Shown here: in pieces, positions 3,401-21,997 of the stretch | Layout: every line of letters starts with the position of its first letter | Numbering within the stretch: the first letter of the stretch is position 1 | Source: Podarcis erhardii | Lineage: Eukaryota | DNA length: 64,000 bases | Reading direction: 5' to 3' (one strand) | Assembly (NCBI GenBank): GCA_964252035.1 | Contig: OZ176205.1 | Made by a program: the position numbers and the translations under genes | Notes under the pieces: model-generated | What the model saw: only the letters and a program-made list of their open reading frames with translations | Told to the model about the DNA's origin: nothing | The model's database searches: none

Positions 3401-6400
3401 ATGATACACACACACACACACACACACACACACACACACACAACCTGAGCCTACAATAGAGGAGCTCACAACATTATCAGCCCAAAACAGTTTTGTTTAT
3501 CCCATAGCTACAGGTTTGAATGCCGGCCATCAGAAATTAGGCATGGTTCTCACAAGCATTTTGCTTCTTTCCTTCTGGCTTCTAGCTCACATCACTGCAG
3601 CTTTCAACTTTGTATTTGTCCTTCAACTCATCTCACAAAGAACCCCTTTCCTTTGTTTACCTTAATGTCCCATCACACAGGTTATCACCTCAACACAAGA
3701 AGGTAGCCTGGCTTATATTTTAACATTTGCTGGATTCAGGTTAGATTTAGAAGGATCTCACATACAGCCTACTTCCTCCCCCACCCCAACTTATAACAGT
3801 ATCATAGACTAGGCTGTCTCTTGGACCCTTGGGACAATGTGGCACTCTCTAGATGCTGTTGGGCTTCAATTTCTATCAACCCCAGTCAACATGGTCAATG
3901 CTCAGGGATGATGGAAGCTATAGTCCAACATCTGGGTGGCATAATGTTGGCTGTCCCTGCCTTTAGGCCTTGAGCTCAAAAAGGCTTTACTATTCACAGC
4001 CAAGTGAGAATCAATTCCACTGGACAGTATGGTCCTCTTACAAAGCTCATGTGCTATCATAAATGTGTATGATGCCAAATGGTTATTTGCTGATTATCCA
4101 GATTGAGAAACCTTAGTAAATACTTCTTGCTGTTTCACGTCTCCAAGCCATCTTTGTTGTTGATTGGCTCTTTTTGTCCTTGCAGAACATGAAGGTAGCC
4201 CAAACTCCTACCCACGGGGTTTGGATGCTGAGCTCCTGTCTGTTGAGCTGGAGAACCAGAGGCTGGAAGATGAGATATTAAAGTTGAAGATCCTGAAGGA
4301 CAGAAGGAAAATAGAAGATGGTGGGGACCATAGCCTACTCTATTGAAGTTGGGCCAAAGAAGTTTAAGATACAGTAGCAGGCATCAATCTCTGCAATTCA
4401 GGGCATTGGCATATATATCACCTAAGCAATCACTTTGATTTGGAGGTTTAAGTGGAAGTGCAGAGTATTCTCTTTGGACAGTAACCAGATCTGTTTGCTG
4501 TTCGTGAAATTCAGCCTCCATAGTTGTCCATTATGGAGAGAAATCATGAAAGATGGCAGAGATGGGCTGAGTATTCTACTGCAGTGAGCTTGCCAACCAG
4601 ATCGTGGTTCATTATTCTCCTGGGCATTTGGGCGGTGCTAAGGTCTGGTGTTTGGTTGTTTATTTTTTATGTTCATCCTTATTCAAGGTGGGATGTGGTT
4701 ATTTTACATTGTTGGGTTTTTTGTGGATGAACACTTCTAGTATATTTGTTTTGTTTTAATGCATTTTTATTGATATTGTTTGTTATCCCTGTAAATCACT
4801 TTGGAACTCCTTTTATGTGAAGCAATTCCTAAACTAAATGCACCAAATCTCATCTACTCATTTGACACATAGATTATACTGCCAGGATTTCCAAGCAGGT
4901 CCTTTTTCTTTGTGATTCTACACATACCCCAAATTTTCAAGACCACCCCATCTGCAGTATGGAGGTTGCTAATGGCCAAAGGTGCTCCTTGAAATGTTGG
5001 GCAGGAAGGGGGCAACATTTCCACAACTTTGGCTTTGGAGATGTAGCTGAAATGTTCAGTAGTGCCAGTCCAGCAAAAACAAATAAGGATATTGAGCTGG
5101 CTTTGTTTTTACAAAGAGCCAGATGAATAATATGCAGGCTCTTGTCCCACCTCATAAGGATTCTTTCCCAGTATTGGCACAAGCAATAACTGTGTTAATG
5201 GGCTCCCCCTGCTCATCTTCTTTTTCATCAGGGTCTTCAGGCACAGAGCTGGCGCAACTGCAGCGGTTACACATGGCAGAGATGGCTCAGCTGCATGCAG
5301 AGATTGGCAGCCTGAGACATGACACAGAGAGGATGAAGCTAAGACATCCCAAGAGGGGGTCACCACTACCCCGGCTGCCACCTCCTATAGCTCCACCCCT
5401 GCCACCTCCTCCCCCTCTTCTTGGATTGCCTGACCCTACCTTTCCAGCTAGTAACATGGTTAGTGCCCCTTTAACTTGGGAAACCTCAGGCAAAAGTCAT
5501 ACTGAATATCTGCTTTTGGAGCGGAAATAGTATAAAAATACTTCTATAGTTTTAATAATTCAGAGCTATCATCCTGTGTGGCTGGCTCTCTCCATATCTG
5601 TGTTCACTCCAGAAAGATGCATCCAGTGGTTCATGCTCTGCTTGATGCAAATATGCTGACCATTTTGCTCAGGGGTGAATGATTTATCTGAAGCTGATGA
5701 GTTATATTCTTAAGAGTTTCCTTGAGGCAGCAAGCCTCATTATTCCCCCTAAGACTGATGCTGGTATTTCCTTTTTCTATTCTTTGGTAATGTAAAACAG
5801 CTCTCATATTTCTGCCTGCTATAGGGCCCCATGAGAGCATCTGCCACAGCTATGAGCCAGTACTTCCTGGACCCTTCTGATGCCCTGGGACCAGCGCCAT
5901 ATGATCCGGCGTATGTCATTTCTATTACCTGTACTATTCTGGGTTGAGCTAGTGGGAGGGCAGCATATGTTTTTTTCCTGTCTCATTCTTGCATGGAGTA
6001 TTTGTAGACACTGCCATGTAAAGTGAAGATGTTCATTTTTTCCATCCTAATACCATTCCTAGGGATGCATTTTGGAATCTAGCCTGTTGAGTCTTTTGGA
6101 CTGCAGCTAGCTCATAGAAAATAGCTGTTGTTAAGAGTTTGGGGTGGTGGGAGATAGGCTATATGCCTAAACCCTCCTAATTCCTGGAAGTGCCTAGAAC
6201 CCCTGGAATTTCACTTAGCTTGGGGTAGCATGCAAGCTGTGTTAACTATTACATGAGTGTGACAATTATCATCTCTCTGCAGGTCTGGCTTTGTGATATT
6301 CTATGATTTTCTTTTGGGCCTGGATCCCACATTTTATCAAGTCTGCCTGGTCTCTGGCCTGTTCCGCAATGGGCAAGAGCTGGGCAAGCCCACCCCACTG

Positions 6401-20400: not shown

Positions 20401-21997
20401 AGAATAAAAACTTGCTCACGCCATACCAAATTGTTTGGTAAGAAATACATTGAGAGAAAAGAAACTCAAATTAGTGTTTTTTTGTAAATATATTTATCCA
20501 TAGTCTGCAAATAATTTTTTTTTTTTTTGATACTACTGTATACTACACTGAAATGTTTAAATATTTGATTGTCCTTGAATCTTCTTGCCACACCCTTTGA
20601 GAACCACTGCTTTACAGATTCATTTGGGTGCAATGGGGAACATTTATGTGGTCTACTAACCCTGGAGTAGAAGGCTCCAGTAGAGTAAGGAGGCACTTGG
20701 ATATTCTGTAATTATATGAAAACCTCAACAGCCTCAGGTATGACAGGCGCCTGCAATCTATGTAAGCCCTACTTTATCCCCGTTTCACCATTATTCTTGT
20801 TCAACAATCACACATATAAAAGAATGTACTTAATGCTATAGTTTTAAACTTCCAGATCCAGTTGGTGCCAGGTGCATCTGTGGTTGTGCGCATAGCAGAT
20901 GGAAGATGGGATGAACTCAGATATACATCAGGGGTACGTATACTAGCTAAGTGAATCTAATCATCACAAACTTTTCATTCCACCCAGGAAAACAAAAGGA
21001 TGAGCATACTAATTAACCATCCACTGGAGAAAACCAAAAGCAATCTCACTTTCATGTTTACCATTTATCAATTTTCTGTGCAGCCAAATTGTAAAACAGA
21101 GCCAGGTGACTTGTTTATAGTGGATTGTCAGAAATCACGTATACTAAAAAGGTTACCAGTAACTGTTCAGAGCACAAACTAACCACACATTAGATCATCA
21201 CATCCTAGCTGACCTTGTCATTTGTTTCAGAGTATTGATCAATCTTATCTGCCAGAGACAACAGATCTGTACAATAAGGAACCCTCTGGAAGAAAAATTG
21301 CAGAATTAATGTTGCAGGAGACTTCAAGAAAACAGGTAAAATTGGGCTATAGCCCTACTTATGAATGGAACAATTTGTCAACTAGCAACAGCCACAGTGC
21401 AGCTCTCCTGACATAAATGAAATTATAATTTAACTGCAAGGTTTGAAGTACACCCATTCTAGTGAGATCAGAACAAATGGAAGTTGCTACATACATTTCC
21501 TGACCGAAAGCTTTGCTCAACATTCTCCATACTGAAGAAATGAACCTATGCTGCCAATTCTTGCAGCAGACCAGCAAGAAGCAAGCAGCATATAAGCGGC
21601 ACACAAAGCACTACCAAACCATTCTACGTTCTAAATCTTATAATAATAATCCAAAAATTGAGAGAACAAGGTACAAGATCTACTACAGAAGCCACAAACA
21701 GAAAACTCATTCAAATTGTGTCCAAAAGTAAGATTCAGGAGCCTGGCTAAAGGAACTTTAAAGACTGAATCTTCCTTTAGGACAAAATTTAAATGAGTTT
21801 TCTGTTTGTGGCTTCTGTCTCAATTTTTGGATTATTAATATAAGATTTAGAACGTAGAATGGTTTGGTGGTGCTTTGTGTGCCGCTTATGTGCTGCTTAC
21901 TTCTTACTGGTCCACATTCTCCATAAGCAGTGCAGGTTTAATTGTGACTTACATGTTTTTCTTTCAGACAAAGTTGAAGGCATTGGAACAAATTTAA
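11465..21997 (+). CDS. CCDC17-like C-terminal extension (or separate downstream gene), ~760 aa with three C2-like repeats
   Basis: 17 exons with pyrimidine-rich AG acceptors and GT donors, all phase-compatible and stop-free: 11465-11606, 11788-11880, 12665-12872, 12980-13086, 13567-13707, 14560-14714, 15021-15141, 15933-16049, 16464-16561, 16654-16866, 17260-17434, 17958-18140, 18951-19202, 19903-19971, 20856-20933, 21231-21335, 21968-21997 (TAA). Total 2287 nt. Peptides include GFDLYIDGARFLPD, IGWAALNVF, YVPCATLLVRL, RPDYSDGVYYS, FALDRGMNLPW and TGIYQLPLYQGAP. Confidence 0.85.
12048..12267. mobile_element. Tc1/mariner (Tigger-like) MITE
   Basis: TA|CAGTGGTATCTTGGGTTA ... TAACCCGAGGTACCACTG|TA: TIRs with TA duplication. 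Confidence 0.85.
13880..14450 (-). mobile_element. CR1 LINE ORF2 3' fragment (degenerate)
   Basis: Minus-strand translation QFVVNKCREMH...DQEQDLGAIV...KAKSMLGI...LLYKSMV...HLEFCVPFWSPHLKKDI is the typical CR1 post-RT region. Confidence 0.8.
15700..15828 (+). mobile_element. CR1-tail-derived SINE/LINE 3' end
   Basis: GCATCTAGTTGGCCACTATGAGAACAGCATGCTGGACTAGGTGGGCCTTTGGTCTGAT resembles the squamate CR1/Squam 3' tail. Confidence 0.55.
17861..17911. repeat. (TG)n microsatellite ~45 nt upstream of acceptor 17958
   Basis: Uninterrupted TG run. Confidence 0.9.
20363..20609. mobile_element. hAT (Charlie-like) non-autonomous element
   Basis: TIRs CAGTGGTTCTAAA ... TTTGAGAACCACTG. Confidence 0.65.
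21569..21912. repeat. Long imperfect inverted repeat (arms 21569-21738 and 21765-21912)
   Basis: The right arm's reverse complement matches the left arm except for scattered substitutions and a ~22-nt insertion in the left arm; 26-nt loop. Confidence 0.9.

What the first reader, a model, noticed from the sequence alone, without database searches (positions are those of the whole stretch)
6283..21997. CCDC17 locus encodes a hidden ~760-aa continuation, giving four tandem C2-like domains
Seen: 17 phase-consistent, stop-free exons (11465-21997) fill the gap between mammal-type CCDC17 and NASP. The six-frame ORF track shows only fragments of them. Four units share one ordered motif set. Opening strand: [12 protein letters not shown] / LGFILDRVKGAP / GFDLYIDGARFLP / GIKFALDRGMNLP. 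Middle W-containing strand followed by G-x-x-x-L: [16 protein letters not shown] / AWAVLRL..TGTHTLTLYHGP / GWAALNVF..DGAHQLRIFHNSP / AWTALHVF..TGIYQLPLYQGAP. Closing strand: AELYLRLV / ATLRLHIF / ATLLVRLI / ASVVVRIA. Knowledge: this GW-x-x-L...G-x-x-x-L-x-LY pattern is typical of Ca-independent C2 domains (B9, NPHP4, RPGRIP1L, DOCK and PI3K types), many in ciliary transition-zone proteins. As I recall, human CCDC17 (~620 aa) ends after the first unit and lies only ~1 kb from NASP. Inference: the lizard keeps an ancestral coiled-coil + 4xC2 protein, perhaps ciliary or flagellar, of which mammals lost three domains.
Basis: partly seen in the sequence, partly recalled or inferred. Interest (0 to 1): 0.88.

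Follow-up and report, generated by a model that had tools for sequence, protein, structure and literature searches.

The report
Long four-C2 CCDC17 gene, already annotated
The lizard CCDC17 gene really does run on for 17 more exons and encodes four C2-type domains instead of the single one in mammals, but current public annotation of closely related lizards and many other animals already contains this long protein.

Summary
Seventeen GT-AG, phase-consistent, stop-free exons (11465-21997) continue CCDC17 in frame and add 761 aa. The spliced product is 98.7% identical to Podarcis lilfordi CCDC17 isoform X1 (1454 aa).

The extension evolves under the same purifying selection as the mammal-type part: dN/dS is 0.22-0.35 against 0.21-0.32.

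An AlphaFold2 model shows four beta-sandwiches.
- Domains 1 and 2 match the AIDA, PI3K and DOCK180 C2 domains at Z about 13.
- Domains 3 and 4 are tied to them by profile-profile homology (80-95%) and recurrent sub-threshold C2 hits.

The long form occurs from ciliates, chytrids and sponges to reptiles, so it is ancestral. Three searches found no mammalian protein carrying domains 2-4. Human CCDC17 (622 aa) ends in the linker after domain 1.

It is not "hidden". RefSeq already lists 1455-aa CCDC17 for Podarcis muralis and Zootoca. Older releases split the gene into CCDC17 plus an uncharacterised LOC.

Two things seem unpublished: the reading as a 4xC2 array, and separate truncations in mammals, salmon (domains 2-4 gone) and snakes (domains 3-4 gone).

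Novelty is low and interest is modest.

The parts
458..520 (+). CCDC17 exon 3 (numbering after the 31-exon Zootoca gene). Exons 1-2, which hold a C2H2 zinc finger, lie upstream of the window.
   Evidence: AG acceptor at 456-457, and the peptide [21 protein letters not shown] equals Zootoca exon 3.
1278..1395 (+). CCDC17 exon 4 (coiled coil)
   Evidence: GT-AG
2184..2343 (+). CCDC17 exon 5 (coiled coil)
2565..2684 (+). CCDC17 exon 6
3123..3256 (+). CCDC17 exon 7
4186..4320 (+). CCDC17 exon 8 (coiled coil)
5232..5458 (+). CCDC17 exon 9 (coiled coil and proline-rich stretch)
5825..5910 (+). CCDC17 exon 10
6283..6498 (+). Exon 11: start of C2 domain 1 ([12 protein letters not shown])
   Evidence: Domain 1 matches AIDA C2 at Z 13.3, PI3Kdelta C2 at Z 13.1 and DOCK180 C2 at Z 12.5.
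7007..7229 (+). Exon 12: middle of C2 domain 1 (GWAKINIF...GRWKIPI)
7565..7675 (+). Exon 13: closing strand of C2 domain 1 (AELYLRLV)
8395..8552 (+). Exon 14: disordered linker. The donor is AG|GTAA, so read-through gives R then a stop (TAA at 8554-8556). AATAAA lies at 8545-8550. Mammalian and other short CCDC17 proteins end at or just before the end of this exon's equivalent.
   Evidence: Model pLDDT is about 30 over this stretch.
11465..11606 (+). Exon 15: first exon of the extension and opening strand of C2 domain 2 (LGFILDRVKGAP)
   Evidence: Domain 2 matches DOCK180 C2 at Z 13.0, dysferlin C2A at Z 12.9 and PI3K C2 at Z 12.8.
11788..11880 (+). Exon 16: C2 domain 2
12665..12872 (+). Exon 17: C2 domain 2 (AWAVLRL)
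12980..13086 (+). Exon 18: C2 domain 2 (TGTHTLTLYHGP)
13567..13707 (+). Exon 19: closing strand of C2 domain 2 (ATLRLHIF). Snake CCDC17 models end at the equivalent of this exon.
14560..14714 (+). Exon 20: opening of C2 domain 3 (GFDLYIDGARFLP)
   Evidence: pLDDT above 90. In one search, 20 of 63 orthologues hit Pfam PI3K_C2 and 9 of 63 hit C2, all below threshold.
15021..15141 (+). Exon 21: C2 domain 3
15933..16049 (+). Exon 22: C2 domain 3 (GWAALNVF)
16464..16561 (+). Exon 23: C2 domain 3 (DGAHQLRIFHNSP)
16654..16866 (+). Exon 24: closing strand of C2 domain 3 (ATLLVRLI) and start of the helical insert
17260..17434 (+). Exon 25: three-helix insert, then the first residues of C2 domain 4
   Evidence: helices at model residues 703-747.
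17958..18140 (+). Exon 26: C2 domain 4 (FALDRGMNLP). This exon was the query of the representative search.
18951..19202 (+). Exon 27: C2 domain 4 (AWTALHVF...TGIYQLPLYQGAP)
   Evidence: Atlas neighbours are Aida_C2, NPHP4_C2_2nd and RPGR1_C.
19903..19971 (+). Exon 28: helices within C2 domain 4
20856..20933 (+). Exon 29: closing strand of C2 domain 4 (ASVVVRIA)
21231..21335 (+). Exon 30: C-terminal tail, donor CAG|GTAAAA
21968..21997 (+). Exon 31: the last 9 codons (TKLKALEQI) and the TAA stop. The C-terminal L-x-L-[ED]-Q-I is conserved in geckos, turtle and alligator.
23708..40300 (-). Neighbouring gene NASP, convergent with CCDC17. It serves as the synteny anchor.
   Evidence: A SHNi-TPR exon lies at 27273-27536. 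The GC peak is at 40-42 kb. Synteny follows PMC4082323.

Best explanation
The region is the 3' two thirds of one protein-coding gene, the lizard orthologue of CCDC17, on the + strand and convergent with NASP. The window holds exons 3-31 of 31. The product is about 1455 aa. It consists of an N-terminal C2H2 zinc finger (off-window), a long coiled coil, C2 domain 1, a disordered linker (exon 14), C2 domains 2 and 3, a three-helix insert, C2 domain 4 and a short conserved tail. This is the ancestral eukaryotic architecture. Mammals, represented here by human, mouse and one marsupial protein, keep only the part up to exon 14. Shown here: the exon chain, its conservation under purifying selection, the C2 fold of domains 1 and 2, the mutual homology of the four units, and the phyletic spread. 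Inferred, at about 50-60%: the protein is a coiled-coil, probably dimeric, scaffold of motile cilia. Its four C2 modules, probably Ca-independent and of the PI3K/AIDA/DOCK type, would bind membrane phosphoinositides or axonemal partners. Under this reading the short mammalian protein is a reduced version with one such module.
For: Gene model: the junctions in the window are all GT-AG and in frame. The product is 98.7% identical to P. lilfordi CCDC17 X1, 97.2% to P. muralis XP_077784914 and 95.2% to Zootoca X1.
Synteny: NASP and an aldo-keto reductase lie downstream on the minus strand (PMC4082323).
Selection: dN/dS for the extension is 0.35, 0.23 and 0.22 against Zootoca, Phrynocephalus and Sphaerodactylus. 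The N-terminal part gives 0.32, 0.21 and 0.25.
Fold: the AF2 model has pLDDT 81 and pTM 0.68 and shows four beta-sandwiches. Domain 1 has Z 12.5-13.3 to the AIDA, PI3K and DOCK180 C2 domains. Domain 2, modelled alone (pLDDT 84, pTM 0.83), has Z 12.7-13.0 to the DOCK180, dysferlin C2A, PI3K and AIDA C2 domains, and nearly all listed Foldseek hits are C2 domains.
Whole-model Foldseek hits are multi-C2 proteins: ferlins, MCTPs, C2CD3, E-Syts and NPHP4.
Repeat homology: hhalign gives 80-95%.
Domains 3 and 4: recurrent sub-threshold PI3K_C2, C2 and DOCK-C2 hits and atlas neighbours.
Phyletic spread into ciliates, chytrids, a sponge and cnidarians.
Ciliary link: CCDC17 is used as a ciliated-cell marker (PMC13096173). 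It is also listed as a ciliary tip protein from airway cilia proteomics (PMC12700831, citing Blackburn 2017).
Against: No transcript data were available, so the exon 14-15 junction is supported only by conservation, phase and other groups' gene models.
Many RefSeq releases split the locus into a short CCDC17 and a separate LOC. A short isoform ending at exon 14 may therefore be the main product in some tissues.
Domains 3 and 4 were not modelled alone.
Ca-binding residues and lipid binding were not examined.
The ciliary tip statement comes from a secondary citation; the primary paper was not held.
No homologue has a solved structure, so the place of the protein in the cilium is unknown.
Confidence: 0.85

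Rival explanations
1. There are two separate genes: a short mammal-type CCDC17 that ends at exon 14, and an independent downstream gene (the 'uncharacterized LOC' of older RefSeq releases) that encodes domains 2-4.
For: Older or other RefSeq annotations split the locus in Podarcis muralis, P. raffonei, Lacerta agilis, Zootoca, Elgaria, Rhineura, alligator, Xenopus laevis, Rana, Amia, skates and sharks. Read-through of the exon 14 donor gives an immediate stop, and an AATAAA lies at 8545.
Against: The junction is in phase and conserved, and newer RefSeq releases merge the two into a 1455-aa protein. In amphioxus, molluscs, Nematostella, a sponge and a ciliate the whole architecture is one predicted protein. 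The LOC models start at inconsistent internal positions (window 11833 or 12698), and 12698 falls inside C2 domain 2, so no conserved start is evident. An immediate stop after a phase-2 AG|GTAA donor is a trivial by-product of the donor consensus.
Confidence: 0.08
2. The downstream exons are decaying relics that are no longer translated in this lizard.
For: Mammals, most teleosts and, in part, snakes have lost them, which shows that they are dispensable in some lineages.
Against: There are no stops or frameshifts in 17 exons, and all splice sites are canonical. dN/dS is 0.22-0.35, the same as in the retained N-terminal part. Domains 3 and 4 are among the best conserved parts from sponge to lizard.
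Confidence: 0.02
3. The repeated units are some other beta-sandwich (Ig-like, ASH/MSP or PapD-like) and not C2 domains.
For: Pfam gives no above-threshold C2 hit for any unit. Some Foldseek hits of the whole model are ciliary central-pair chains of uncertain fold (9nw3_3A, 7som_F/G).
Against: Nearly all of the 50 listed PDB hits for domain 2 are C2 domains, and the same holds for domain 1. Z is about 13, and 115-148 residues align at 2.4-3.3 A. The sub-threshold Pfam hits that recur across members are mainly C2 families.
Confidence: 0.03

Closest known systems
CCDC17 long form as annotated in RefSeq (e.g. Podarcis muralis XP_077784914.1, 1455 aa; Zootoca vivipara XP_060132934.1, 1455 aa; Podarcis lilfordi CAI5777312.1, 1454 aa)
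   Same: It is the same gene, with 95-99% amino-acid identity over the 1340 aligned residues. The exon count matches (31 in Zootoca, of which 29 lie in the window), and so does the C-terminus ...TKLKALEQI.
   Different: There is nothing substantive. The window lacks exons 1-2. Older releases of the same species split the gene in two (581-694 aa plus 689-715 aa).
Mammalian CCDC17 (human Q96LX7, 622 aa; mouse Q8CE13, 565 aa); Pfam CCDC17_middle_coil (PF28454) and CCDC17_C (PF28455)
   Same: It is the orthologue by synteny with NASP. The coiled coil and C2 domain 1 are shared, with 42% identity over the aligned 245-258 residues.
   Different: The mammalian proteins stop in the linker after domain 1, so they lack about 760 aa (domains 2-4, the helical insert and the tail). 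The Pfam name 'CCDC17_C' treats domain 1 as the C-terminus, which holds only for the truncated lineages. No Pfam model covers domains 2-4.
PI3K-type, AIDA-type and DOCK-type C2 domains (Pfam PI3K_C2, Aida_C2, DOCK-C2)
   Same: They share the eight-stranded beta-sandwich. Z is 12.5-13.3 and rmsd 2.4-3.3 A over most of the domain for units 1 and 2. Units 3 and 4 give recurrent weak sequence hits.
   Different: Sequence identity is only 9-19%, and no curated threshold is reached. Here four such domains sit in tandem behind a coiled coil, without any kinase, GEF or AIDA N-terminal module.
Multi-C2 ciliary and centriolar proteins (C2CD3, NPHP4, RPGRIP1/RPGRIP1L, CC2D2A)
   Same: They share tandem, presumably Ca-independent C2 modules, often combined with coiled coils, in proteins of the ciliary compartment. 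They are Foldseek and atlas neighbours.
   Different: No orthology is shown, the domain order and partners differ, and localisation of CCDC17 to the transition zone is not shown. The only localisation statement found says ciliary tip.

Membership tests
CCDC17 orthologue group | High full-length sequence identity to named CCDC17 proteins | tested here: met
   Identity is 98.7% to P. lilfordi CCDC17 X1 and 60% to alligator isoform C over about 1300 aa.
CCDC17 orthologue group | Conserved neighbourhood: convergent with NASP, with AKR1A1 beyond it | tested here: met
   NASP exons (SHNi-TPR) lie on the minus strand at 23.7-40 kb, and aldo-keto reductase exons lie at 49-52.5 kb. The synteny is described in PMC4082323. 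The same NASP adjacency is seen in the Zootoca, Pituophis, salmon and Petaurus loci.
CCDC17 orthologue group | Pfam CCDC17_middle_coil (PF28454) and CCDC17_C (PF28455) | not testable with these tools
   The two models are absent from the local Pfam copy. Precomputed hits are listed for the 98.7%-identical orthologue cluster and all long forms, and the names come.
C2 domain superfamily (PI3K/AIDA/DOCK-like) | Eight-stranded antiparallel beta-sandwich that superposes on solved C2 domains | tested here: met
   Domain 1: Z 13.3 to AIDA C2, 13.1 to PI3Kdelta and 12.5 to DOCK180. Domain 2: Z 13.0 to DOCK180, 12.9 to dysferlin C2A and 12.8 to PI3K. Domains 3 and 4 have eight main strands in the whole-chain model but were not searched alone.
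C2 domain superfamily (PI3K/AIDA/DOCK-like) | Sequence match to a curated C2 profile above threshold | tested here: not met
   Only sub-threshold hits were found. PI3K_C2 reaches a best E of 2.6e-4 (20 of 63 members of domain 3) and C2 reaches 6.4e-4 (9 of 63). Domain 4 gives 4 PI3K_C2 hits and 1 DOCK-C2 hit, and domain 2 gives none.
C2 domain superfamily (PI3K/AIDA/DOCK-like) | The four units are homologous to each other | tested here: met
   hhalign gives D1-D2 80%, D1-D3 87%, D1-D4 93%, D2-D3 92%, D2-D4 81% and D3-D4 95%, over 102-164 columns.
Ca-independent C2 subclass | Absence of the canonical set of five Ca-binding aspartates in loops 1 and 3 | not tested
   Only an impression from the domain 3 consensus (ARFLPD is kept, with no SDPYV-like second site). 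No structure-based alignment to a Ca-binding C2 was made.
Motile-cilium protein | Co-occurrence with motile cilia or flagella across eukaryotes | tested here: inconclusive
   The named hits all come from lineages with motile cilia or flagella (metazoans, the ciliate Blepharisma, chytrids); one atlas neighbour cluster carrying CCDC17_C is commonest in Chlorophyta. No hit came from Dikarya, land plants, arthropods or nematodes. No systematic presence/absence test was done.
Motile-cilium protein | Protein detected in cilia | not testable with these tools
   The literature offers only a ciliated-cell marker (PMC13096173) and 'ciliary tip protein' (PMC12700831, citing a proteomics paper that was not held).

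The most novel reading that the evidence does not exclude
CCDC17 is an ancient four-C2 protein of motile cilia that has been cut back from the C-terminus independently, each time at an exon boundary. It was cut after C2-1 in mammals and in clupeocephalan teleosts, and after C2-2 in snakes. The cut after C2-1 coincides with the exon 14 donor. Read-through of that donor ends the ORF at once, and short gene models end there in sharks, salmon, anoles, snakes and lacertids. The mammalian protein may therefore be the fixed form of a pre-existing short isoform (intron-14 read-through or polyadenylation) and not a new truncation. Human CCDC17 would then be a one-module remnant, and its full function would be better studied in Xenopus, Nematostella or ciliates.
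Probability: 0.3. Interest if true: 0.5.

Novelty: already known. Interest (0 to 1): 0.33.

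Why it matters
For genome annotation, the locus shows how mammal-centred naming hides an ancestral architecture. 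The Pfam name 'CCDC17_C' and the old split into CCDC17 plus LOC models are examples, and the merged model is the correct one for this lizard. For cilia biology, CCDC17 is a widely used but uncharacterised marker of multiciliated cells. Knowing that the human protein is the short remnant of a conserved zinc-finger, coiled-coil and 4xC2 protein points to better model organisms. It also suggests a testable role as a C2-based membrane or axoneme adaptor. The independent truncations in mammals, teleosts and snakes offer a natural experiment on which modules are dispensable.

Tried and rejected
- Pfam scans of single exon translations gave nothing, because the pieces are too short.
- Full-length Pfam scans gave only sub-threshold PI3K_C2 hits, because the local Pfam copy lacks PF28454 and PF28455.
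- Sequence searches of the PDB with the family profile and with the ciliate homologue found no relative, only zinc-finger and coiled-coil noise. The protein is therefore not among chains modelled in axoneme cryo-EM maps.
- The Foldseek hits to ciliary central-pair chains (9nw3_3A, 7som_F/G) have TM 0.25 or less and were not taken as homology.
- The primary proteomics paper behind 'ciliary tip protein' (PMC5733142) is not held.
- No paper links CCDC17 with C2 domains.
- The look-up of encoding contigs had no record for isoforms P0077 and P0074 and no DNA for the sugar glider locus. Decayed exons in a mammal could therefore not be searched.
- I first ended the gene at a stop at 21414-21416 in exon 30.
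- The 'splice-or-stop switch' idea was downgraded, because R-stop after a phase-2 AG|GTAA donor follows from the donor consensus alone.

Full report
**1. What is in the window**

The + strand of 1-22 kb carries a multi-exon vertebrate gene. Downstream on the minus strand lie NASP and an aldo-keto reductase gene. NASP has a large acidic exon at 32.6-33.8 kb, a SHNi-TPR exon at 27273-27536 and a GC-rich 5' end near 40 kb. The aldo-keto reductase exons are at 49-52.5 kb. This is the CCDC17-NASP-AKR1A1 neighbourhood described for vertebrates in PMC4082323.

**2. Homologues**

A phmmer search with one extension exon (17934-18218) against 1.8 billion representatives returned only 33 hits. Many were proteins of 1230-1570 aa in which the exon matches near residue 1000-1270. 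Cluster look-ups name them:
- CCDC17 of a gecko (1233 aa), alligator (isoform C, 1390 aa) and toads (1454 and 1476 aa);
- a bonefish protein, which UniRef names CCDC17;
- amphioxus proteins, some of them named CCDC17;
- unnamed proteins of a hemichordate, nemertean, oyster, annelid, brachiopod, flatworm and jellyfish.

A wider search with the extension of the gecko protein added many more lineages: other lizards, turtles, salamanders, frogs, bichir, gar, eels, Nematostella, the sponge Oscarella, an acoel, the ciliate Blepharisma and chytrid fungi.

tblastn of gecko, alligator and toad proteins onto the window is collinear over about 28 exons.

**3. Gene model**

The closest proteins are lacertid. 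Using Podarcis lilfordi CCDC17 X1 (P0162) as guide, each of the 27 junctions the guided search covered was solved uniquely, with GT-AG and preserved phase. The C-termini of long orthologues (...TKLKALEQI...LALEQI...LILDQI) showed that the gene does not stop in exon 30. It splices from 21335 (CAG|GTAAAA) to a nine-codon last exon at 21968-21997.

The window holds exons 3-31 of a 31-exon gene. Exons 1-2, which encode a C2H2 zinc finger in the Zootoca orthologue, lie upstream of the window. The assembled product (1346 aa, partial at the N-terminus) is 98.7% identical to P. lilfordi, 97.2% to P. muralis and 95.2% to Zootoca CCDC17.

**4. Is it 'hidden'?**

No. The 90% cluster of the lacertid protein contains:
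- merged models: XP_077784914.1 (P. muralis, 1455 aa), XP_060132934.1 (Zootoca, 1455 aa) and CAI5777312.1 (P. lilfordi, 1454 aa), all named CCDC17;
- older or split models for P. muralis, Zootoca, P. raffonei and Lacerta agilis: 'CCDC17' of 581-694 aa plus 'uncharacterized LOC' of 689-715 aa.

The same split is seen in many other species. The short models end at N-x-R-stop, which is read-through of the exon 14 donor (AG|GTAA; window 8552/8553). In the window an AATAAA lies at 8545-8550. Whether this reflects a real short isoform or only model building cannot be decided here. An immediate stop after a phase-2 consensus donor is expected by chance.

**5. Selection**

I fetched the orthologous loci of Zootoca, the agamid Phrynocephalus and the gecko Sphaerodactylus. 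I rebuilt their CDS so that each translates exactly to the database protein. Nei-Gojobori dN/dS values are:

| Comparison | Extension | N-terminal, mammal-type part |
|---|---|---|
| Zootoca | 0.35 | 0.32 |
| Phrynocephalus | 0.23 | 0.21 |
| Sphaerodactylus | 0.22 | 0.25 |

The extension is thus constrained exactly like the rest of the gene.

**6. Fold**

AlphaFold2 was run on residues 330-1340 of the Podarcis protein with a 63-sequence alignment. It gave pLDDT 81 and pTM 0.68. The model shows four beta-sandwiches of eight main strands (model residues 17-172, 268-455, 502-657 and 772-956). There is a disordered linker at 198-264, which corresponds to exon 14, and a three-helix insert at 703-747.

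- **Whole model.** Foldseek against the PDB returns ferlins, DOCK5, PI3K C2 domains, AIDA C2, E-Syt2 and copine. Against Swiss-Prot models it returns human and mouse CCDC17 first. These align only to domain 1 plus the linker: human residues 384-619 of 622. C2CD3, plant MCTPs, ferlins, E-Syts and NPHP4 follow.
- **Domain 1.** VIA-align places it on AIDA C2 (Z 13.3; 135 of 152 residues at 2.5 A), PI3Kdelta C2 (Z 13.1) and DOCK180 C2 (Z 12.5).
- **Domain 2.** This domain had no sequence hint at all, so it was modelled alone (pLDDT 84, pTM 0.83). It matches DOCK180 C2 (Z 13.0), dysferlin C2A (Z 12.9; 115 of 126 residues at 2.4 A), PI3K C2 (Z 12.8) and AIDA C2 (Z 12.7). Nearly all listed hits are C2 domains.
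- **Domains 3 and 4.** They were not modelled alone. hhalign links all four units at 80-95% probability. Of 63 orthologues of domain 3, 20 hit PI3K_C2 and 9 hit C2 below threshold. Domain 4 gives PI3K_C2 and DOCK-C2 hits. Its nearest annotated ESM-Atlas clusters are NPHP4, Aida_C2, CCDC17_C, RPGR1_C and PI3K_C2.

Ca-independence was not tested.

**7. Ancestry and losses**

The full architecture in a sponge, cnidarians, a ciliate and chytrids makes the long form ancestral.

No mammalian, bird, snake or non-elopomorph teleost protein carrying domains 3-4 appeared in three searches with different length windows.

One search shows that Pfam 38.1 names domain 1 'CCDC17_C', a mammal-centred label. 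No Pfam model covers domains 2-4.

Direct locus checks gave three results:
- **Sugar glider.** NASP begins 3.6 kb after the end of the 604-aa CCDC17-like gene. No DNA was available.
- **Salmon.** The NASP-adjacent CCDC17 matches the eel long form only up to the exon 14 equivalent. Nothing of domains 2-4 is detectable downstream.
- **Snake (Pituophis).** Exons are found through domain 2, and nothing of domains 3-4 appears in the 10 kb that follow, with NASP 5.5 kb away. This agrees with four snake models, from four species, that all end ...DP/HTEA/V after domain 2.

These findings suggest repeated C-terminal truncation at exon boundaries. The mammalian case still needs a genome-level search.

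**8. Function**

No solved structure contains a homologue. The literature found is thin:
- CCDC17 serves as a marker of multiciliated cells (PMC13096173).
- It is listed among ciliary tip proteins co-precipitating with DNAAF9, with reference to an airway-cilia proteome that I could not read (PMC12700831).
- No paper connects CCDC17 with C2 domains.

Together with the phyletic pattern, which is limited to lineages with motile cilia or flagella among the hits, the most likely role is a coiled-coil scaffold of motile cilia. Its C2 modules would bind membrane lipids or axonemal partners. This is an inference, not a demonstration.

**9. Verdict**

However, the long protein is already in public annotation for this lizard family and many other animals, so the gene structure is not new. 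What appears not to be in the literature is the reading of the protein as a 4xC2 array and the lineage-specific truncations. These are of moderate interest to cilia and annotation specialists.

Noticed in passing
window 8545-8556: The exon 14 donor is AG|GTAA, so an unspliced transcript reads R then TAA. An AATAAA lies 7 nt upstream, inside the exon (codons N-K). Short CCDC17 gene models of sharks, salmon, anoles, snakes and lacertids all end N-x-R-stop at this point. This may mark a real short isoform or only reflect the donor consensus.
   Followed up: partly
L004 (Pituophis catenifer) 29752-39865: Snake CCDC17 stops after C2 domain 2. tblastn with the window protein finds no trace of domains 3-4 in the 10 kb downstream, and NASP starts 5.5 kb on. 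Four snake protein models, from four species, share the same end (...DP/HTEA/V).
   Followed up: partly
L005 (Salmo salar) 10001-31938: The NASP-adjacent salmon CCDC17 (674 aa) has lost domains 2-4, whereas eels, bonefish, gar and bichir keep them. The loss therefore falls within teleosts, after the elopomorphs branched off.
   Followed up: partly
proteins P0235-P0237, P0244, P0246, P0251: Sharks, rays, lungfish and bichirs carry a second, short 'CCDC17-like' paralogue (about 650-670 aa; one search gives 36-40% identity to the lacertid query, and two of them are 45% identical to the window protein). It needs a tree to show whether teleost short forms descend from it.
   Followed up: no
upstream of window position 1 (Zootoca locus L001 2001-4753): Exons 1-2 of CCDC17 lie outside the window. 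Exon 1 encodes a conserved C2H2-type zinc finger (CxxC...H...C), and it is this part of the family profile that matches BCL11A fingers in the PDB search.
   Followed up: partly
window 17864-17910 and 19290-19340: (TG)n/(CA)n microsatellites lie in introns 25 and 27. They show up as CVCVCV and THTHTH in the ORF list.
   Followed up: no
window 21997-23708: The CCDC17 stop and the last coding exon of NASP on the opposite strand are only about 1.7 kb apart. The two 3' UTRs must converge and may overlap. The first + strand ATTAAA after the stop is at 22817.
   Followed up: no
window 49225-52549, minus strand: Aldo-keto reductase exons (Pfam Aldo_ket_red) lie here. By synteny this is AKR1A1.
   Followed up: partly
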